A DNA stretch of 7,680 nt, from the NCBI GenBank assembly GCA_977017575.1, contig CDRNVI010000245.1, positions 1-7,680 of the forward strand. The letters are read 5' to 3'. The notes under the pieces are model-generated. The model saw only the letters and a list, made by a program, of their open reading frames with translations, searched no databases and was not told where the DNA came from. The DNA is from Paramoeba atlantica (Eukaryota > Protista > Discosea). Positions 1-7,680 of the stretch are shown here, piece after piece; positions within the stretch are counted from its first letter, which is position 1, and every line of letters begins with the position of its first letter. Position numbers and translations under genes: made by a program.

Positions 1-96
1 CTGTTAATTTTCCATCAACATCATAATTTTTATTTAAAAATTTTAATCAAAATCAATTTTATAAACATTTTTTGTAAAAAAATTAAAATTTTTACT

Positions 97-166
97 GGAA
101 AATTACGGTGAGATGCATAAAAATTAGATTTAAACATAAATTTATGCAAACTACCGTTTAATTTCC
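97..166. other. Imperfect hairpin (also at 4706-4775)
   Basis: tgcataaa 114-121 / tttatgca 141-148; acggt 105-109 / accgt 153-157; looser ggaaaatta / taatttcc at the base. Confidence 0.6.
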
Positions 167-512
167 AACAAAATTTAAATTTTTTTCATTCAAAAATAGA
201 TTTTTTTAATTTTTCGCCGACAAAATTGAAAAAAAATTGAATTTTCATTCAAAAAGTTGTAAAATTGAGTCTCAGGATGAAAAAGTGGAAAAAGACCACA
301 TTTTATCAATTCGACGCTAAATTAGCAAAAAATTTCAATTTCTACACCTAAATGACTGTAGAAATTGGTGTTTTCCTACAATTTTGTGGAAACTCCTGAC
401 AAACACTGCTAAATTTCCAACAAAAAGTCAATTTGCAGGTGCTGCCCGTGGATTTTCCAACAAAATACTAGCAAAACTACTCAAAATGCTATTTTTCCGG
501 CAGAAAACCGTC

Positions 513-656
513 AAAATCTGCTTTTTCTGGGCAGGAATGACAAAAACGGCCCAAAAAAGGCCCTGTCATTTTGCCCAAAAACGCAGTATTTTTTCCTGTT
601 CTGGCCTGCAAATTAGCGGATGTCCAAGTGCCCCAAAAAAAGTGACTTGGACTCCG
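513..656 (+). other. Two GC-richer hairpins with C-A(n) loops (also at 5122-5265)
   Basis: 513-592: aaaat-ctgc/gcag-t-atttt, tgggcag/ttgccca (one G-U), aatgaca/tgtcatt, ggcc-CAAAAAA-ggcc. 617-656: cgga/tccg plus gtccaagt/acttggac. Confidence 0.65.
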
Positions 657-804
657 AGCCGACTCGAAAAGTCGTATTTTCCGGCAGAAACGAAAAAATA
701 TGCCACATTTTGTCCGACGATTATTTACAACTTTTTCTCGCATCCCATCATAGCGATTTTGCGGATCTGCAAGTTGGGAGGGAACCAACTGCATTTTTTG
801 GCCG

Positions 805-957
805 TTTTGAACCCGTTTTGTAAAAAATCGCATATATAAACTCCATAATTTCCCCTCAGAAATCTGCCACTTTTGGACGCCAAAAAGTGTTTTGCAGAAT
901 CTCGAGGGCAAAATAGGAGTTTTTTGACCCGATTTTGTGAACAAAACTGGCATCAAA
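805..957 (+). other. ~150-nt rod-like hairpin (also at 5414-5566)
   Basis: Nested stems: ttttga/tcaaaa, gttttgt 815-821/acaaaac 940-946, aaaatcg/cgatttt, aaactcc 838-844/ggagttt 916-922, ccctc/gaggg, tctgc/gcaga, cacttttgg 868-876/ccaaaaagtg 880-889. The loop is ACG in copy A and AGA in copy B. Confidence 0.75.
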
Positions 958-1092
958 AACTATTCCAAATGCTCCAATCCGAATTTCAGCTATTGAACAC
1001 TAAAAATGCTGAAAATCGCTATTTCGCACTGGAATTCCGCCAAAACTCCTTTTCAATGCGTATTTTGGGCGAGAAAATCGTGAATTTTATAA

Positions 1093-1372
1093 TTTTTAAA
1101 CTTTTTTTTGTATAATTTATCATTTTTAGCGCGGATTTGTATAATTTCTCGCATAATTTATTAGTTTTATAGCGTTGTAGTTAAAATTTTCATAATTTTA
1201 TCATCAAAGTCATCATTTTTCTATAATTTCAAACAAAATTATTAAAAAAAATGTTGTCTCAGACGAAAAAATTGCATGAAAGTTGTTAAACAACACTAAA
1301 ACTAAAAAAATATCCCGCAGAAATTAAAAAACCGTGATAAAAATTTATAAATTCAAAAGAAAAATTTAAAAA
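1093..1372 (+). other. ~280-nt imperfect rod-like hairpin (also at 5702-5981)
   Basis: T-rich arm against A-rich arm in colinear nested order: tttttaaa/tttaaaaa, tttatca/tgataaa, gcggat/atcccgc, ttagtttt/aaaactaa, gttgt/acaac, tttcat/atgaaa, cattttt/aaaaatg, ataattt/aaattat around loop caaaca (1230-1235). Confidence 0.65.
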
Positions 1373-1392
1373 TCTTAAAAATTTATGATGAA

Positions 1393-1421
1393 ATCATCTT
1401 CTTTGTACCAAAATCAGATGT
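1393..1421 (-). repeat. Partial reverse copy (R') of the ~85-nt module (also 6002-6030)
   Basis: atcatcttctttgtaccaaaatcagatgt is identical to the core of the reverse module at 6431-6459. It is enclosed by tgatg 1386-1390 / catca 1425-1429. Confidence 0.85.
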
Positions 1422-1562
1422 AAACATCAAAAAATTTTTTTAAAATCACTAGTTGAAACCATCGTCTATGGTTTCTTTTGTTAATGATCAATGTTTTCAT
1501 TTCATTCATAACATTTTCACGTTAACTTCGTTCAACTAACTTGAATTTTATTAAAATTATGA

Positions 1563-1619
1563 TTCATAAAATAATTTTTTCATTGCTAAAAATAAAACCG
1601 CAATGGAAATTATTATGAA
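1563..1619 (+). other. Hairpin (also 6172-6228)
   Basis: ttttcattgc 1577-1586 / gcaatggaaa 1600-1609 (one U-G), extended by aataa/ttatt and ttcat/atgaa. The two inter-copy substitutions (1595, 1598) both lie in the loop. Confidence 0.7.
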
Positions 1620-1633
1620 ACAAGTTTTAATAA

Positions 1634-1659
1634 TTCAAACTTAAGTTTGAACTCGAGTT
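1634..1659. other. Overlapping perfect palindromes (18 bp + 10 bp), also 6243-6268
   Basis: ttcaaacttaagtttgaa 1634-1651 and aactcgagtt 1650-1659 are each their own reverse complement. Confidence 0.9.
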
Positions 1660-1806
1660 ATAAAATTTTAATAACATTAATATATACTTTTAAATAACTT
1701 CTATAATTAATTCAAAAGAGAATTTATAATTAAGAACTTATAAAACTATATTTAATGATTTAAAACTTAATAACTTGTTGTAATGTTTTCAATATAATAA
1801 TATATT

Positions 1807-1877
1807 TACGATATATTATCTTCTTTGTTCCAAAATCAGATGTTGATTATCGTACATTCTTATTACATGAAAACATA
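1807..1877 (-). repeat. Reverse-orientation copy (R) of the ~85-nt module
   Basis: 1831-1877 is the reverse complement of 2039-2085 (47 nt, 2 mismatches). 1833-1876 is the perfect reverse complement of 2395-2438 (44 nt). Confidence 0.95.
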
Positions 1878-2040
1878 ACAACATAAAGAATACAATAGGC
1901 ACTCCTTACATTTAAATGCCCTTAATATAATTTATCGATATATTTAATTACACAAATAATTTAAAATATAATTTATAAAATATTAATAAAGTTCATGTAA
2001 AATGTAAGAAGTTACCCTAGTTTTCCTGGTATTGTGAGTA

Positions 2041-2125
2041 TGTTTTCATGTAATAAACATGTACGATAATCAACATCTGATTTTGACTCAAAGCAGAGTA
2101 ATCATCGTTAAATATCGTTACAAAG
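2041..2125 (+). repeat. Forward module F1 (aaacatg variant)
   Basis: gttttcatgtaataaacatgtacgataatcaacatctgattttgactcaaagcagagtaatcatcgttaaatatcgttacaaag; near-identical copies at 2395, 6655 and 7021. Confidence 0.95.
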
Positions 2126-2394
2126 TTATTACAAATAAAACATAAATCACTAATAACAGGAAAATATTAAATACAAAAATATTTAATAAACTTCGATGCA
2201 AAAAAGCATCTTGACAATCTCTGTGTTTTTGTTAAAAAAAATAGCGTAAAACTACAAAACCATATATATAAAATGAAAAGTGTATAAAAAAGAAAAGCAT
2301 ACACTTTGATACATTCAATCGAAAAATATCTCAATCATGTATCATTAATTTTAGTATATATGGTAGGAGTTTTACCTTTACAGTGCTATTAGTC

Positions 2395-2480
2395 ATGTTT
2401 TCATGTAATAAGAATGTACGATAATCAACATCTGATTTGCACTCAAAGTAGAGTAATCATCGTTAAATATCAGTACAAAG
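2395..2480 (+). repeat. Forward module F2 (aagaatg variant)
   Basis: Direct repeat of 2041-2125, about 355 nt downstream. Confidence 0.95.
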
Positions 2481-2517
2481 TCATTACAAGAAAACTAAAG
2501 ATTAAAGCACTGTAAAA

Positions 2518-2552
2518 TTGCACTAAGATTTCCTTCAGAAATTCAAGTGCAA
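2518..2552 (+). other. TAAGATTT..AAATTCAA hairpin family, member H1
   Basis: ttgcact-aa-gatttc-cttca-gaaatt-ca-agtgcaa. Confidence 0.9.
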
Positions 2553-2629
2553 ATATCCGCCCAACTTATAAAATATAAGTGGCGTCTATATATATTTTTT
2601 TATCGAAAAAAACGATAAATAAATAAAGA

Positions 2630-2662
2630 TCATGATAAGATTTCTACGAAATTCAATCATGA
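2630..2662 (+). other. TAAGATTT..AAATTCAA hairpin family, member H2
   Basis: tcatgat-aa-gatttc-tac-gaaatt-ca-atcatga. Confidence 0.9.
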
Positions 2663-2663
2663 A

Positions 2664-2683
2664 GCATACACTATAGTGTATGC
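2664..2683. other. Perfect 20-bp palindrome (also 7322-7341)
   Basis: gcatacactatagtgtatgc equals its own reverse complement. Confidence 0.95.
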
Positions 2684-2827
2684 AAATTATTACAAAAATA
2701 ATAATTTTAAAATTTTTTCTTCGAAATTCAAAGAAGAATTTATTCGAAAAAAATATAAATTTTAATGTTTTCGTGTTTAACTACAACTTAAATTTATATA
2801 TATTTCGTTAAATTAAGAGAATAATTA

Positions 2828-3100
2828 AACGAAACTGTTACTCGGCAAAAATAAGGGAATTTTTGAGTAACAGACCGTTCAAATTGAAAACAAAAAAACA
2901 ATTTGCACGGCAATTCTTGGGGTTTTTACGCCTCACGGCTTCGTGATTGGACTAAAGAGCAGGAGCGAGAGCAAGAAAGTTTGCAGGGGTAGTTGAGTTA
3001 GCTATTCCCGGTGGAAGCTAACCTCGATTCTTTAGTCTTTAGTTGTGGTAATTTGGGATAGTGAAGTAAAATTTTTAAAGTTCACTATCGACAATTACTA
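2828..3100 (+). ncRNA. Putative structured RNA domain of unknown family (GC-richer, multi-hairpin); partial second copy 7486-7680
   Basis: ctgttactc 2835-2843/gagtaacag 2865-2873; tcacg-gctt-cgtga 2933-2946; ggactaaagag 2949-2959/ttctttagtct 3028-3038 enclosing gcaa/ttgc and gttagct 2997-3003/agctaac 3016-3022; gatagtgaa 3057-3065/ttcactatc 3081-3089. No family motif recognised; that it is an RNA is inference. Confidence 0.35.
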
Positions 3101-3640
3101 TTCTCTTTCATCTTTTGGCGTGCATTGCTAATTGATCCCAATAGACAATCACATTCAGAAATGATCGTTGCTATCCCTATATGTATGTAAAATATCATAC
3201 ATAAGAATCAATAAGATCTATTTCGTCTCCTCTTTCATCCTTTTAACATAGCAAGACTAATCTATATTATATAATTATTATTCAACTTTTTTAATTATAT
3301 TTTATCTGCTTGAACACCATAGTTCGATAAAAAATAAATAAAAAGATGAATAAATAACTAAAAAATAAAGATAGACAAGAACAAGAATAGTTTAGTTTAA
3401 TTCCGTGTTAAATCCTCAATCCTTAAGTCGGATTTGTCACTCCATATACGATCAAACTTTATTTACTTAAATTTTTACAAAGATAGTAAAATTAAAAGTA
3501 TAAAGATGATCTAGCTCACCAGTTTTATTTAAATTAAAATCTTACACAATGATTTTATATTTATAAACTACTCGCTTCCATCGACCCTCGACTTTGTTGA
3601 AGTTTAAGTTTTTGAGTTTACGATATTAAAGAGAAAAAAA

Positions 3641-3786
3641 ATATTATTGCGCTCTATTGGTGGGGCTTTCGTTAAATTATTAAAAGCTCAACGTCATTGT
3701 TCGCGTTTTACGTTACACTCCACAAGCTAAACAAGTGCGTTCTGCCTTAATAATCACTACCCCTCACCAAAAGGTCGCAATAATAT
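3641..3786 (+). other. 146-nt rod-like hairpin
   Basis: atattattgcg 3641-3651/cgcaataatat 3776-3786; ttggtgggg 3657-3665/cctcaccaa 3762-3770 (one G-U); attattaa 3676-3683/ttaataat 3747-3754; ttgtt 3697-3701/aacaa 3730-3734. Confidence 0.75.
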
Positions 3787-3790
3787 ATGT

Positions 3791-3894
3791 TTTTAGCGTT
3801 TAAGATCTGGAGACCATTTTCAAAATAGAAAATGTCAATCGCTTTTTTCTTACGCAAGTACGTCAAAAAAATCGTTTTTCTCCATGAGCTAAAA
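3791..3894 (+). other. Branched hairpin domain including a C-GCAA-G loop
   Basis: ttttagc/gctaaaa, tggaga 3808-3813/tctcca 3879-3884, cattttc 3815-3821/gaaaatg 3828-3834, tac-GCAA-gta 3851-3860. Confidence 0.55.
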
Positions 3895-4157
3895 CGAGTT
3901 AGTTCGATCGGGCTTTTTTTGATGCTTTTTTTGGATCGCAGCTTCAACAAAAAAAAATTTCCGCTGCTGTTTTCCAACAAAGAAAATTATAAAAAAATAA
4001 TTTTGTTGTTGTCAAATACGATCTTTTAAAATATAAAATTTTTTTTATCGTTATAAATTTTATTCCGACATAAATTTGTTGGAAAAGTAACAGTAAAAAG
4101 TTGTTAATGAAAAAAAAATAAATTCATTAACAACAACGTTGATGAAAAATAACAATC

Positions 4158-4625
4158 AACGCTGTTAAATTTCCAACAAAATAATGTCAGAAAAAAATTT
4201 CTGCCGAAATAATTTAGCTGATTAAATTTTTATCACGACAAAAATATTTTTTTGTTGATCAATTAAATCGTTATTAACAAAAAAGTTATAACGCTGTTAA
4301 TTTTCCAACATAAAAATTTTTTATCTCTCAAAAAATATTTTTTGATGTTCAAAGTTATCGTTTGATAACAAAAAAGTTATAACGCTGTAACTTTTCCAAC
4401 AAAAAAAATTTTTTTTCGTGTTAAAAATTATTTTTGATCAATAAAAATTATTTTCGATGTTCAAATTCATCGTTTGATAACAAAAAAGTTATAACGCTGT
4501 TAATTTTCCATCAAAAATTATTTTTTTTGCTTCAAAAATTTTTTTTAACATAAAAATTTATAATGATGATTACAAAATAAGTGTTGCAACTCAAAAAAGT
4601 TGTTTAACACTGTGAATTTTCCATC
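4158..4625 (+). repeat. Degenerate minisatellite, ~90-130-nt period, core aacgctgttaattttccaac
   Basis: Core at 4158, 4290, 4381, 4493 and 4606 (spacings 132, 91, 112, 113). tttgataacaaaaaagttataacgctgt occurs at 4361 and 4473. Outlying cores at 402/5011 and ~3962; a reversed core at ~4076-4093. Confidence 0.85.
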
Positions 4626-6420
4626 AACATCATAATTTTTATTTAAAAATTTTAATCAAAATCAATTTTATAAACATTTTTTGTAAAAAAATTAAAATTT
4701 TTACTGGAAAATTACGGTGAGATGCATAAAAATTAGATTTAAACATAAATTTATGCAAACTACCGTTTAATTTCCAACAAAATTTAAATTTTTTTCATTC
4801 AAAAATAGATTTTTTTAATTTTTCGCTGACAAAATTGAAAAAAAATTGAATTTTCATTCAAAAAGTTGTAAAATTGAGTCTCAGGATGAAAAAGTGGAAA
4901 AAGACCACATTTTATCAATTCGACGCTAAATTAGCAAAAAATTTCAATTTCTACACCTAAATGACTGTAGAAATTGGTGTTTTCCTACAATTTTGTGGAA
5001 ATCCCTGACAAACACTGCTAAATTTCCAACAAAAAGTCAATTTGCAGGTGCTGCCCGTGGATTTTCCAACAAAATACTAGCAAAACTACTCAAAATGCTA
5101 TTTTTCCGGCAGAAAACCGTCAAAATCTGCTTTTTCTGGGCAGGAATGACAAAAACGGCCCAAAAAAGGCCCTGTCATTTTGCCCAAAAACGCAGTATTT
5201 TTTCCTGTTCTGGCCTGCAAATTAGCGGATGTCCAAGTGCCCCAAAAAAAGTGACTTGCACTCCGAGCCGACTCGAAAAGTCGTATTTTCCGGCAGAAAC
5301 GAAAAAATATGCCACATTTTGTCCGACGATTATTTACAACTTTTTCTCGCATCCCATCATAGCGATTTTGCGGATCTGCAGGTTGGGAGGGAGCCAACTG
5401 CATTTTTTGGCCGTTTTGAACCCGTTTTGTAAAAAATCGCATATATAAACTCCTTAATTTCCCCTCAGAAATCTGCCACTTTTGGAGACCAAAAAGTGTT
5501 TTGCAGAATCTAAAGTGGAAAATAGGAGTTTTTTGACCCGATTTTGTGAACAAAACTGGCATCAAAAACTATTCCAAATGCTCCAATCCGAATTTCAGCT
5601 ATTGAACACTAAAAATGCTGAAAATCGCTATTTCGCACTGGAATTCCGCCAAAACTCCTTTTCAATGCGTATTTTGGGCGAGAAAACCGTCGATTTTATA
5701 ATTTTTAAACTTTTTTTTGTATAATTTATCATTTTTAGCGCGGATTTCTATAATTTCTCGCATAATTTATTAGTTTTATAGCGTTGTAGTTAAAATTTTC
5801 ATAATTTTATCATCAAAGTCATCATTTTTCTATAATTTCAAACAAAATTATTAAAAAAAATGTTGTCTCAGACGAAAAAATTGCATGAAAGTTGTTAAAC
5901 AACACTAAAACTAAAAAAATATCCCGCAGAAATTAAAAAACCGTGATAAAAATTTATAAATTCAAAAGAAAAATTTAAAAATCTTAAAAATTTATGATGA
6001 AATCATCTTCTTTGTACCAAAATCAGATGTAAACATCAAAAAATTTTTTTAAAATCACTAGTTGAAACCATCGTCTATGGTTTCTTTTGTTAATGATCAA
6101 TGTTTTCATTTCATTCATAACATTTTCACGTTAACTTCGTTCAACTAACTTGAATTTTATTAAAATTATGATTCATAAAATAATTTTTTCATTGCTAAAA
6201 ATAGAATCGCAATGGAAATTATTATGAAACAAGTTTTAATAATTCAAACTTAAGTTTGAACTCGAGTTATAAAATTTTATAAATTTAAATTATAATTTCA
6301 ATCATTTCTATAATTAATTCAATAGAGAATTTATAATTATGAAACTATGAAACTATATTTAATGATTTAAAATTTAATAATCCCTGTATGTGTTCTTTAT
6401 GTTTTCAATGTCTGATGATA

Positions 6421-6490
6421 TGTTCGATATATCATCTTCTTTGTACCAAAATCAGATGTTGATTATCGTACATTCTTATTACATGAAAAC
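6421..6490 (-). repeat. Reverse module R, copy B
   Basis: 6447-6490 is the perfect 44-nt reverse complement of 6655-6698. Confidence 0.95.
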
Positions 6491-6654
6491 AAAAAAGAAC
6501 ATACAACAGGGAAATACTAAGATACTTTAATAACTATTATGTATATAAATTGATCGAATATATAATTACAAAAATAATTTAAAATATTCAATAATATTAA
6601 ATATATATAGTTATTAAAGTGATCTTGTATCCTAGTTCATGTCGATTCTTTTAG

Positions 6655-6737
6655 GTTTTCATGTAATAAGAATGTACGATAATCAACATCTGATTTTGAC
6701 TCAAAGTAGAGTAATCATCGTTAAATATCAGTACAAA
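6655..6737 (+). repeat. Forward module, copy B first (aagaatg variant)
   Basis: Matches 2397-2479 apart from a few bases, and shares the aagaatg and tatcagtaca diagnostic bases. Confidence 0.95.
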
Positions 6738-6779
6738 ACTTATTACAAAGAAAACAACTAATAAAGCATCGACATGAAA

Positions 6780-6849
6780 TTCTGCTAAGATTTCTACGAA
6801 ATTCAAGCAGAAAATTACACTAAGATTTCCTATAGAAATTCAAGTGTAA
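6780..6849 (+). other. Tandem pair of TAAGATTT..AAATTCAA hairpins (H3 6780-6812, H4 6815-6849)
   Basis: ttctgct-aa-gatttc-tac-gaaatt-ca-agcagaa; ttacact-aa-gatttc-ctata-gaaatt-ca-agtgtaa. Confidence 0.9.
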
Positions 6850-7020
6850 ACAAACATTAGTATTGCAAAAACAATCTATGTTTGTATTAAAAAAAACACA
6901 TCTAGAACAATATAATATAAATCAATAAAAATATTTAATTACAAAAATAATATAAAATATAATTTATAAATTTATTATTAAAATGATCTAGATGAACATA
7001 TTCCTGGGTATTCTAATGTG

Positions 7021-7103
7021 GTTTTCATGTAATAAACATGTACGATAATCAACATCTGATTTTGACTCAAAGTAGAGTAATCATCGTTAAATATCGTATA
7101 AAG
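7021..7103 (+). repeat. Forward module, copy B second (aaacatg variant)
   Basis: Matches 2042-2125 apart from a few bases, and shares the aaacatg and tatcgt diagnostic bases. Confidence 0.95.
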
Positions 7104-7142
7104 TTTATTAATAATAAAACCACAAAGGAATCCAAGGAATAA

Positions 7143-7212
7143 TTATGCTAAGATTTATACTAAATTCAAGCATAAGATTGCACTAAGATTTCCTTCAGAA
7201 ATTCAAGTGCAA
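7143..7212 (+). other. Tandem pair of TAAGATTT..AAATTCAA hairpins (H5 7143-7175, H6 7178-7212)
   Basis: ttatgct-aa-gattta-tac-taaatt-ca-agcataa; ttgcact-aa-gatttc-cttca-gaaatt-ca-agtgcaa. Confidence 0.9.
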
Positions 7213-7285
7213 ATATCCGCTCAACTTATAAAATATAAGTGGCGTCTATATATTTAATCATTACAAAAATAATGAATTAAATAGA

Positions 7286-7320
7286 TCATGATAAGATTTT
7301 TTACAAAAATTCAATCATGA
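7286..7320 (+). other. TAAGATTT..AAATTCAA hairpin H7
   Basis: tcatgat-aa-gattttt-tac-aaaaatt-ca-atcatga; positional homologue of H2 with a different but still paired inner stem. Confidence 0.9.
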
Positions 7321-7680
7321 AGCATACACTATAGTGTATGCAAATTATTACAAAAATAATAATTTTAAAATTTTTTCTTCGAAATTCAAAGAAGAATTTA
7401 TTCGAAAAAAATATAAATTTTAATGTTTACGTGTTTAACTACAACTTAAATTTATATATATTTCGTTAAATTAAGAGAATAATTAAACGAAACTGTTACT
7501 CGGCAAAAATAAGGGAATTTTTGAGTAACAGACCGTTCAAATTGAAAACAAAAAAACAATTTGCACGGCAATTCTTGGGGTTTTTACGCCTCACGGCTTC
7601 GTGATTGGACTAAAGAGCAGGAGCGAGAGCAAGAAAGTTTGCAGGGGTAGTTGAGTTAGCTATTCCCGGTGGTAGCTAAC

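What the first reader, a model, noticed from the sequence alone, without database searches (positions are those of the whole stretch)
1..7680. Whole 4.6-kb tandem unit behaves like one very large modular folded nucleic acid
Seen: hairpins or rods follow one another almost without gaps, at 97-166, 513-592, 617-656, 768-793, 805-957, 984-1014, 1093-1372, 1455-1475, 1563-1619, 1776-2401, 2518-2707, 2803-3100, 3641-3786, 3791-3894 and 3983-4211. Many stems are 8-13 bp and perfect, there is no credible ORF, and inter-copy changes tend to fall in loops or keep pairing. Inference: this is a tandemly arrayed long structured ncRNA (scaffold or small-RNA precursor) or an element with a single-stranded DNA phase. 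I recognise no known family. Caveat: A/T-tract-rich DNA folds easily by chance.
Basis: partly seen in the sequence, partly recalled or inferred. Interest (0 to 1): 0.85.

Follow-up and report, generated by a model that had tools for sequence, protein, structure and literature searches.

The report
Hairpin-dense non-coding 4.6-kb tandem repeat
This is a non-coding 4.6-kb tandem repeat packed with real inverted repeats, but they look like palindromes made and kept at the DNA level in a complex satellite, not like one giant folded RNA.

Summary
The window holds 1.66 copies of a 4.61-4.66-kb tandem unit. The flanks are 97-100% identical and about 1 kb (1670-2650) is hypervariable. The hairpin density is real. 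Sliding-window folding gives mean z of -1.8 on both strands. Fourteen of the 15 listed hairpins reach z of -2.3 or lower on both strands. Local inverted 10-mers number 50, against 12 in shuffles and 4-7 in mirror/complement controls. No ORF, Pfam, Rfam or tRNA match was found, and no relative in any collection searched.

Nothing points to an RNA. Both strands fold equally well, G-U pairs are only 3-5% of pairs, and loops show no strand bias. The constant parts show no compensatory change (4 broken pairs). The backbone carries a 10.2-bp AA/TT periodicity, which is a property of duplex DNA. In the variable region, hairpin families keep a conserved cap but have unrelated, perfectly Watson-Crick arms, and symmetric double changes never pass through G-U. 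That pattern fits replication template switching or arm-to-arm copying.

Best reading (0.55): a complex satellite of nested DNA palindromes. A role as a small-RNA (hairpin RNA) precursor stays open (0.2). The scan noted similar ORF-less 4.5-kb units on other pieces of this genome (s1-370178, s1-369920).

The parts
1..4609 (.). Tandem unit, copy 1 (complete)
   Evidence: k-mer offsets 4609-4658 between the copies
4610..7680 (.). Tandem unit, copy 2 (partial, corresponds to 1-3022 of copy 1)
   Evidence: Pairwise alignment: 97-100% identity in the flanks, 40-84% across 1670-2650
3960..4609 (+). Sub-repeat zone (91-112-bp degenerate units) that continues into 1-470 of the next unit. It carries most copies of the 13-nt motif WTTTCCAACAAAA.
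   Evidence: TRF rows with periods 91 and 112; family D4/D5; motif found 14 times in the window against 0.48 expected, 13 of them on +
1..1500 (.). Constant backbone with AA/TT periodicity of 10.2 bp (phased A/T tracts, i.e. curved duplex DNA)
   Evidence: Spectral peak 33 times the mean for the unit, against a shuffle maximum of 12.5. The signal is strong in 1-1500 and 4001-4500 and absent in 1500-4000.
513..592 (.). 80-nt GC-richer hairpin
   Evidence: z -4.9 (+) and -6.2 (-); sub-threshold mir-2007 hit at E 0.06, 26 bits against a gathering score of 100
805..957 (.). 153-nt rod. Copy 2 differs at 903-909 in a way that breaks the stem.
   Evidence: z -7.3 (+) and -8.8 (-); differences listed; broken pairs
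1093..1372 (.). 280-nt imperfect AT-rich rod
   Evidence: z -7.6 (+) and -7.0 (-)
1670..2650 (.). Hypervariable region: one inverted and two direct sub-repeats of about 360 bp, built from R/F modules and small hairpins
   Evidence: Identity 40-84% here against 97-100% in the flanks; F modules spaced 355 and 366 bp apart (D3)
1805..1879 (+). R module, an inverted copy of F. It pairs with both F modules.
   Evidence: Inverted repeats I1 and I2: 73-75-nt arms, 83-84% complementary. The fold of 1770-2480 has z -16.6.
2028..2141 (+). F module, copy 1a. The core of about 75 nt is nearly invariant among the four F copies.
   Evidence: Family D3; alignment A3
2383..2496 (+). F module, copy 1b
6641..6754 (+). 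F module, copy 2a
7007..7120 (+). F module, copy 2b
1876..2044 (.). Hairpin of about 165 nt between R and F. It shares an apical cap (core TTACAAAAATAA) with the hairpins at 6494-6658 and 6855-7024, but its arms are unrelated to theirs.
   Evidence: Folds; cap motif found 6 times, all on +, against 1.5 expected
2516..2554 (+). K hairpin: conserved inner stem-loop with a variable outer stem. Other members are at 2628-2664, 6778-6814, 6813-6851, 7141-7177, 7176-7214 and 7284-7322.
   Evidence: Seven copies, 100% of cells paired, 6 of 13 pairs changed on both sides and none on one side only
2803..3100 (.). String of hairpins that includes a GC-richer stretch (2900-3060)
   Evidence: z -4.4 (+) and -9.1 (-)
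3641..3786 (.). 146-nt rod
   Evidence: z -4.9 (+) and -6.0 (-); inverted repeat I9
3983..4211 (.). 229-nt rod with nested perfect 12-bp and 7-bp hairpins
   Evidence: z -8.5 (+) and -10.4 (-); I3

Best explanation
The window is part of a non-coding, long-unit (4.6 kb) complex satellite. It was built by repeated local duplication in both direct and inverted orientation.

The hairpins are DNA palindromes. They arise and are kept perfect when one arm is copied from the other during replication or repair, by template switching, fold-back priming or arm-to-arm conversion. That gives Watson-Crick-only stems, symmetric double changes, and conserved apical caps flanked by unrelated arms.

Unequal crossing-over and gene conversion keep the backbone about 99% identical between units. 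The palindromic stretch of ~360-bp sub-repeats is unstable and therefore hypervariable.

The backbone works, if it works at all, as duplex DNA. It carries helically phased A/T tracts and a 13-nt motif repeated about ten times per unit in one orientation. Both suggest curved DNA or chromatin-protein binding, as in centromeric or heterochromatic satellites.

Shown here: the repeat architecture, the excess of inverted repeats, the absence of coding and of any strand-specific RNA signature, the periodicity, and the compensated changes. Inferred: the template-switch mechanism, the chromatin role and the nuclear location.
For: Tandem unit with homogenised flanks and a variable core. The excess of inverted repeats is equal on both strands, and direct repeats are enriched as much. 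G-U pairs are only 33-50 of about 1000 pairs. Single mismatches split 40 transition-type to 30 transversion-type, as expected for decaying DNA palindromes. Loops have no strand bias.

K hairpins: 100% paired, 6 of 13 pairs changed on both sides and 0 on one side, including C:G to A:T transversion swaps that cannot pass through G-U. The orthologous pair K_2628 / K_7284 differs by a symmetric C-to-TT and G-to-AA change in the two arms, next to 300 nt of 100% identity. The hairpin beside R is rebuilt in a shifted register in copy 2.

The ~165-nt hairpins share a cap but have unrelated arms. AA/TT periodicity at 10.2 bp is 33 times background against a shuffle maximum of 12.5. The 13-nt motif occurs 14 times against 0.48 expected. 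There is no ORF, Pfam, Rfam or tRNA match.

Template switching is documented to create perfect stems and multi-base compensatory changes in single events (PMC8794818). Satellites rich in dyad symmetry are a known class (PMC5889037 and PMC13081366).
Against: Only 1.66 copies are visible, so homogenisation and turnover rest on a single comparison. Perfect pairing in every K hairpin, and an F core that stays nearly invariant inside a hypervariable region, could also reflect selection on a folded RNA or on a protein-recognised hairpin. Transcription, copy number, chromosomal position and even the compartment (nuclear or organellar) are unknown. No relatives were found, so there is no cross-species test. 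The DNA-level and small-RNA readings do not exclude each other.
Confidence: 0.55

Rival explanations
1. Small-RNA precursor array. The unit is transcribed. The long R/F duplexes (73-75-nt arms with a 44-bp perfect core), the ~165-nt hairpins and the rods are diced into siRNAs or miRNA-like RNAs. These either silence targets that match the variable arms or direct heterochromatin formation onto the array itself.
For: The duplexes are very long and nearly perfect, with z -13.8 to -16.6 for the 711-726-nt folds. Arms vary while hairpin geometry is kept. Tandem hairpin-RNA clusters with rapid turnover exist in Drosophila: hp-CG4068 has 9-20 tandem copies and hp-tHMG has 13 hairpins within 27 kb (PMC10317233). 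Many satellites are transcribed into siRNA precursors (my own knowledge).
Against: No strand asymmetry, G-U enrichment or loop bias was found. Many hairpins (K, CAAAAA-capped, stems of 6-9 bp) are too short to be Dicer substrates. Half of the unit shows 10.2-bp duplex-DNA phasing rather than anything RNA-like. No promoter, transcript or target can be examined here. The only Rfam miRNA hits are chance-level (E 0.06-0.65).
Confidence: 0.2
2. A nest of foldback or MITE-like mobile elements. R-hairpin-F would be a non-autonomous DNA transposon of about 310 bp with 73-75-nt terminal inverted repeats. It inserted into a satellite unit and was then amplified and rearranged together with the array. 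The other rods would be older, decayed insertions.
For: Long terminal inverted repeats surround a short interior. The rods of 146-280 nt resemble MITEs in size and shape. The F core is conserved while its surroundings diverge.
Against: No target-site duplication is evident at the R/F boundaries, because the inverted repeat simply fades out. F also occurs without a partner, as a direct sub-repeat every 355-366 bp. No transposase remnant was found. Dispersed copies could not be looked for, and the sequence look-up in the scan notes was blank.
Confidence: 0.1
3. Organellar, kinetoplast-like DNA. The unit would be a minicircle-like element in tandem form, with a conserved bent region and a variable region. 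The cassettes flanked by inverted repeats would encode guide-type small RNAs.
For: The sequence is AT-rich, at 18-42% GC. It has phased A-tracts of the kind classic for minicircle bent DNA. It combines a constant region with a variable cassette region flanked by inverted repeats. Unchecked scan notes describe a spliced leader and SLACS/CRE- and VIPER-like retroelements in this genome. In Trypanoplasma, guide-RNA DNA is organised around tandem repeats (PMC9679448).
Against: The universal minicircle 12-mer (CSB-3) is absent even when 2 mismatches are allowed, whereas the Trypanoplasma repeats do carry a CSB-3-like block. The scan notes also mention introns and a group II intron in this genome, which do not fit a kinetoplastid. 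Guide RNAs cannot be tested without the edited mRNAs. The cassettes are hairpins, which is not a feature of guide RNAs.
Confidence: 0.07
4. Hairpins as protein recognition sites. The cap-conserved, arm-variable hairpins (the K family with its fixed unpaired T and CAA, and the CAAAAA caps) would be bound in single-stranded DNA or in RNA by a structure-specific protein. They would mark cassette boundaries for recombination, in the manner of integron attC sites, or tether proteins to a scaffold RNA.
For: Loops and unpaired bases are conserved while stems vary but always pair. All members lie in one orientation. They sit at the edges of segments that differ between adjacent units.
Against: The shared orientation follows from descent by direct duplication. 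No recombinase or any other gene lies in the unit. Only seven K copies, with five stem versions, are visible. Template switching explains the same pattern without any function.
Confidence: 0.05
5. One reading: the whole unit is one very large, modular, structured non-coding RNA.
For: High folding z-scores throughout the unit.
Against: The z-scores are the same on the opposite strand. G-U pairs are only 3-5% of pairs. The constant region shows no covariation (0 compensated and 4 broken pairs among 348). The F hairpin has a positive (unfavourable) covariation term. Sequence composition is A/T-tract rich and of low complexity. Duplex-DNA periodicity covers about 45% of the unit.
Confidence: 0.03

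Closest known systems
Satellite DNAs rich in dyad symmetry / non-B-form DNA (centromeric satellites surveyed by Kasinathan & Henikoff, PMC5889037; Tribolium madens satellites with macro-dyad symmetries, PMC13081366)
   Same: Tandem and non-coding, with copies homogenised between units. There is a strong excess of short and long inverted repeats on both strands. The sequence is AT-rich with phased A-tracts.
   Different: The unit is very long (4.6 kb) and internally complex. It holds a hypervariable core of about 1 kb and families of hairpins with conserved caps and unrelated arms. Any centromeric or heterochromatic location is untested.
Drosophila tandem hairpin-RNA (hpRNA) clusters such as hp-CG4068 and hp-tHMG (PMC10317233)
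   Same: Tandem arrays of long inverted repeats with rapid turnover of copy and sequence, and no coding capacity.
   Different: hpRNAs are defined by Dicer-2-dependent siRNAs and by arms derived from target genes, and neither can be tested here. In this unit only about a quarter is long duplex, and the rest is short hairpins and phased A/T-tract DNA.
Template-switch-generated hairpins (Monttinen & Loytynoja, PMC8794818)
   Same: Perfect stems, multi-base compensatory changes that appear as single events, changes of register, and loop alterations.
   Different: That work concerns RNA genes and reconstructs events on phylogenies. Here the mechanism is inferred from a handful of paralogous and orthologous hairpins, without an ancestral reconstruction.
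Kinetoplast minicircle-type DNA, including Trypanoplasma guide-RNA contigs (PMC9679448)
   Same: A conserved region plus a variable region, bent A-tract DNA, cassettes flanked by inverted repeats, and AT-richness.
   Different: No CSB-3 12-mer is present. The unit is 4.6 kb and arranged in tandem. The cassettes are hairpins. Guide-RNA function is untestable here, and the genome notes mention introns.
Palindromic selfish repeats in organelle genomes (for example Volvox carteri, PMC2670323, abstract seen)
   Same: Dense short palindromes spread through AT-rich non-coding DNA.
   Different: Those repeats are dispersed between genes. Here they make up a gene-less tandem unit, and the compartment is unknown.

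Membership tests
Satellite / macrosatellite DNA | Head-to-tail tandem copies of one unit | tested here: met
   1.66 copies at offsets 4609-4658. Longer arrays on other pieces are reported only by unchecked scan notes.
Satellite / macrosatellite DNA | Non-coding | tested here: met
   The longest stop-free run is 172 codons, within reach of shuffles (maximum 157) in a GC-richer stretch. None of 43 pieces has a significant Pfam hit, and the ORFs are absent from the protein collection.
Satellite / macrosatellite DNA | Concerted evolution (high identity between units) | tested here: met
   97-100% identity per 100 columns outside 1670-2650, but based on one pair of copies only.
Satellite / macrosatellite DNA | High copy number and a heterochromatic or centromeric location | not testable with these tools
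   No read depth, assembly context or chromatin data are available.
Any curated RNA family (Rfam 15) | Score at or above the family's gathering threshold | tested here: not met
   The best hits are mir-2007 at 26 bits (gathering score 100) and MIR3932 at 23 bits (gathering score 150), with E 0.06-0.65. No tRNA or tmRNA was found.
Structured non-coding RNA (generic) | Strand-specific signal: lower z on one strand, G-U pairs tolerated on that strand | tested here: not met
   Mean z is -1.79 (+) against -1.81 (-). G-U pairs number 33 (+) and 50 (-) out of about 1000. A-rich loops number 32 and T-rich loops 24.
Structured non-coding RNA (generic) | Covariation that supports the helices | tested here: inconclusive
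   Constant region: 0 compensated and 4 broken pairs of 348. F hairpin: covariation term +1.56, with 1 of 34 pairs compensated. K hairpins: 6 of 13 pairs compensated and 100% paired, but with no G-U intermediates, and the members are paralogues that template switching could generate.
Hairpin-RNA (hpRNA / endo-siRNA) locus | Long, near-perfect inverted repeat within one transcription unit | tested here: inconclusive
   The duplex is present (73-75-nt arms, 83-84% complementary, 44-bp perfect core). The transcription unit is unknown.
Hairpin-RNA (hpRNA / endo-siRNA) locus | Dicer-dependent small RNAs of about 21 nt from the arms, and arms homologous to a target gene | not testable with these tools
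   No small-RNA data and no access to the rest of the genome.
Kinetoplast minicircle-like DNA | Conserved sequence block 3 (universal 12-mer) | tested here: not met
   0 matches with up to 2 mismatches.
Kinetoplast minicircle-like DNA | Bent-helix region of phased A-tracts | tested here: met
   The 10.2-bp AA/TT peak is 33 times the mean, against a shuffle maximum of 12.5. This feature is not specific to kDNA.
Kinetoplast minicircle-like DNA | Guide-RNA genes complementary to edited mRNAs | not testable with these tools
   No edited mRNA sequences of the organism are available.
MITE / foldback transposon | Terminal inverted repeats | tested here: met
   R against F arms.
MITE / foldback transposon | Target-site duplication and dispersed copies | tested here: inconclusive
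   No duplication is seen at the arm ends by reading the sequence. Dispersed copies could not be searched for.

The most novel reading that the evidence does not exclude
The hairpin families with conserved caps and variable arms (K hairpins, CAAAAA caps, the F/R modules) would be functional recognition or processing sites. They would make the variable core a cassette system. Either it is a programmable small-RNA factory whose arm sequences set the targets, or it is a eukaryotic, structure-guided cassette-exchange system that works through single-stranded hairpins, in the manner of integron attC sites. In both cases it would be embedded in a homogenised tandem scaffold.
Probability: 0.12. Interest if true: 0.8.

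Novelty: new member of a known kind. Interest (0 to 1): 0.38.

Why it matters
If the DNA-level reading holds, this array is a clear natural example of palindromes being created and repaired arm-against-arm inside a satellite. It would be useful for studying template-switch mutation, cruciform-prone DNA and why some parts of a homogenised array stay hypervariable. It is also a caution for genome scans. High folding z-scores and 'compensatory' changes can arise with no RNA involved. Strand symmetry, the G-U content and duplex-DNA periodicity are cheap discriminators. If the array instead proves to be transcribed and diced, it would be a large hairpin-RNA locus with swappable arms in a little-studied eukaryote.

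Tried and rejected
- Rfam at E up to 1 gave only chance-level miRNA-like hits. ARAGORN found nothing.
- Exact look-up of 10 ORFs in the protein collection found none. Pfam on 5 ORFs and then on all 43 stop-free pieces gave nothing significant. Alternative genetic codes lengthen ORFs only as expected when stops are removed.
- Exact-pattern scans with the 25-nt F core found nothing in metagenome, viral or prokaryotic genome contigs. A 22-nt stretch from 2965-2990 found nothing in metagenome contigs. blastn of the whole unit against plasmids and phages found no match.
- The kinetoplast universal 12-mer is absent.
- A test for A-rich loops on one strand was not significant. G-U asymmetry between the strands was not significant overall and had opposite sign in different regions.
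- Pair-status counts in the variable region were set aside, because at 40-60% identity the pairwise alignment there is not reliable.
- I tried to identify the organism from the scan notes. They mention a spliced leader, SLACS/CRE- and DIRS/VIPER-like elements, tRNA arrays, introns, a group II intron and a giant rDNA unit. A euglenozoan seems possible, but this remains unresolved and nothing in the report depends on it.
- The literature search on Prp8 inteins plus spliced leader was uninformative.
- I looked by eye for C/D-box snoRNA features in R and F. A UGAUGA occurs in copy 2 of R only, and no consistent box pair was found, so I dropped the idea.


Full report
**What is there.** The window (7680 nt, GC 18-42%) holds 1.66 head-to-tail copies of one unit. 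Shared 16-mers sit at an offset of 4609 over positions 1-1670 and of 4658 over 2649-3014, with a patchwork of other offsets in between. A global alignment of the two copies gives 97-100% identity per 100 columns outside about 1670-2650, and 40-84% inside it. Unchecked scan notes describe similar 'ORF-less 4.5-kb tandem units with a constant backbone and a swappable cassette' on other pieces of the same genome (s1-370178, s1-369920).

**Check of the observation.**
- All 15 listed regions fold as hairpins or rods. Fourteen have z between -2.3 and -13.8 on both strands against dinucleotide shuffles, and 3791-3894 is weak.
- These regions were hand-picked, so I also ran an unbiased sliding window (120 nt, step 60, 50 shuffles). 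Mean z is -1.79 on + and -1.81 on -, with 42-44% of windows below -2.
- Segments of 700-900 nt give z from -7.4 to -16.6, with RNA or DNA parameters.
- A test that uses no energy model agrees. 10-mers with a reverse-complement partner within 300 nt number 50. Block-wise dinucleotide shuffles give 11.7 +/- 4.3, and the mirror and complement controls give 7 and 4. Direct repeats are enriched as much (88).
- So the excess of inverted repeats is real and is not explained by A/T tracts.
- 'Almost without gaps' is overstated. The listed intervals add up to 2351 of 4609 nt, more than half of the 120-nt windows are unremarkable, and about 3300-3720 scores near zero.
- 'No credible ORF' holds. The longest stop-free run is 172 codons in the GC-richer part, where shuffles reach 157. 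None of 43 stop-free pieces has a significant Pfam hit, and the ORFs are not in the protein collection.

**RNA or DNA?** Every discriminator I could compute points away from a strand-specific RNA.
- The two strands fold equally well.
- G-U pairs are 33 of 978 pairs on + and 50 of 1007 on -. The sign of the difference flips between regions.
- Single mismatches inside stems split 40 transition-type to 30 transversion-type, as expected for decaying DNA palindromes.
- Of 62 perfect-stem hairpins, 32 have A-rich loops and 24 have T-rich loops.
- In the constant parts, 344 predicted pairs are unchanged between the copies, 4 are broken (position 650 and 903-909) and none is compensated.
- The four F modules share a core of about 75 nt that is almost invariant. 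Their predicted self-hairpin has a positive covariation term and several broken pairs.
- Rfam gives only chance-level miRNA-like hits, and there are no tRNAs.
- Conversely, AA/TT dinucleotides recur every 10.2 bp. The spectral peak is 33 times the mean, against a maximum of 12.5 in 200 shuffles. It is concentrated in 1-1500 and 4001-4500 and absent from 1500-4000. Helical phasing of A/T tracts has meaning only in duplex DNA (curvature, nucleosome or protein wrapping).
- The same backbone carries the 13-nt motif WTTTCCAACAAAA 14 times in the window (0.48 expected), 13 of them on +. Most copies lie in a zone of degenerate 91-112-bp sub-repeats that spans the unit junction.

**The variable core.** It consists of sub-repeats of about 360 bp, one inverted (R) and two direct (F).
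- R pairs with either F over 73-75 nt at 83-84%, including a 44-nt perfect core. This closes multibranched folds of about 700 nt.
- Three kinds of smaller hairpin recur here with a conserved cap and variable arms.
- The first kind is the seven K hairpins. They have a fixed inner stem-loop and fixed unpaired T and CAA, while the outer 6-7-bp stem comes in five versions. All 91 cells are paired, 6 of 13 pairs changed on both sides and none on one side only.
- The second kind is hairpins capped by TTACAAAAATAA. This motif occurs 6 times, all on +, against 1.5 expected.
- The third kind is the ~165-nt hairpins between R and F. They share that cap but have unrelated arms.
- Two orthologous comparisons are telling. 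K_2628 and K_7284 differ by a symmetric change in the two arms, C to TT and G to AA, directly beside 300 nt of 100% identity. The hairpin next to R is rebuilt in copy 2 with several base changes and a shifted register.
- Independent point mutations under RNA-level selection would need several matched events and should leave G-U intermediates. Copying one arm from the other in one event leaves none. Such copying (template switching in replication, fold-back priming, arm-to-arm conversion) is documented to create perfect stems and multi-base compensatory changes (PMC8794818).

**Most likely explanation (0.55).** This is a complex, non-coding long-unit satellite built of nested DNA palindromes. 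Array-level recombination homogenises the backbone. Arm-to-arm copying keeps the palindromes perfect. The palindromic sub-repeat core is unstable and therefore hypervariable. The phased A/T tracts and the oriented 13-nt motif suggest a duplex-DNA or chromatin role. Satellites rich in dyad symmetry are an established class (PMC5889037, PMC13081366). The mechanism and the role are inferred, not shown.

**Rivals.**
- Small-RNA precursor (0.2). The long duplexes would be good Dicer substrates, and tandem hairpin-RNA clusters with fast turnover exist (PMC10317233). This reading is compatible with the satellite reading and cannot be tested without RNA data.
- Foldback or MITE nest (0.1). Terminal inverted repeats are present, but no target-site duplication or dispersed copy could be shown.
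- Kinetoplast-like DNA (0.07). Bent DNA and the layout of a constant region plus a variable cassette region fit. The universal 12-mer is absent, whereas the Trypanoplasma repeats do carry a CSB-3-like block, and the scan notes mention introns.
- Protein-recognised hairpins or cassette exchange (0.05).
- One giant structured RNA (0.03).

**Relatives.** None were found. The 25-nt F core has no exact match in metagenome, viral or prokaryotic genome contigs. A second 22-mer has none in metagenome contigs. The whole unit has no blastn match in plasmids or phages. These collections are poor in eukaryotic DNA, so the blank says little. nt, Dfam and Repbase could not be searched.

**Verdict.** I class it as a new member of a known kind (dyad-rich complex satellite) of moderate interest. 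There is a small chance (about 0.12) that the cap-conserved hairpin cassettes are a functional system of real novelty.

Noticed in passing
window 1-1500 and 4001-4609: Strong 10.2-bp periodicity of AA/TT dinucleotides (peak 33 times the mean, shuffle maximum 12.5). A5-6 or T5-6 tracts are separated by GC-rich tetramers or pentamers, in the style of classic bent DNA. The signal is absent from 1500-4000.
   Followed up: yes
window 161, 413, 453, 3970, 4169, 4301, 4392, 4504 (+) and 4074-4086 (-), and their copy-2 equivalents: The 13-nt motif WTTTCCAACAAAA occurs 14 times in the window (0.48 expected), 13 of them on +. It is usually preceded by CTGTTAA-like bases. It could be a protein-binding box.
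   Followed up: partly
window 2042-2120, 2397-2475, 6655-6733, 7021-7099: The F core of about 75 nt is almost invariant in four copies while the sequence on either side is under 50% alike. This is sequence-level conservation or conversion of one module inside a hypervariable region, with no covariation in its own hairpin.
   Followed up: partly
window 2935-2990: A short G/A-rich, T-poor stretch stands out from the AT-rich surroundings. The adjacent hairpin at 2997-3022 has a loop difference between the copies at 3015. No RNA family matches.
   Followed up: no
window 3113-3124: GGCGTGCA resembles, from my memory only, part of conserved block 1 of trypanosome minicircles. It is a single 8-mer that could be chance, and it is not supported by the absent 12-mer block 3.
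   Followed up: no
window 3300-3720: A stretch of about 400 nt has local folding z near 0 and neither repeats nor periodicity. It is seen in one copy only, so its conservation is unknown. It is the most 'unique-looking' part of the unit.
   Followed up: no
window 512-592 and 5121-5201 (-): Sub-threshold Rfam hit to mir-2007 (26 bits against a gathering score of 100, E 0.06) on the 80-nt GC-richer hairpin. I judge it to be generic hairpin resemblance.
   Followed up: yes
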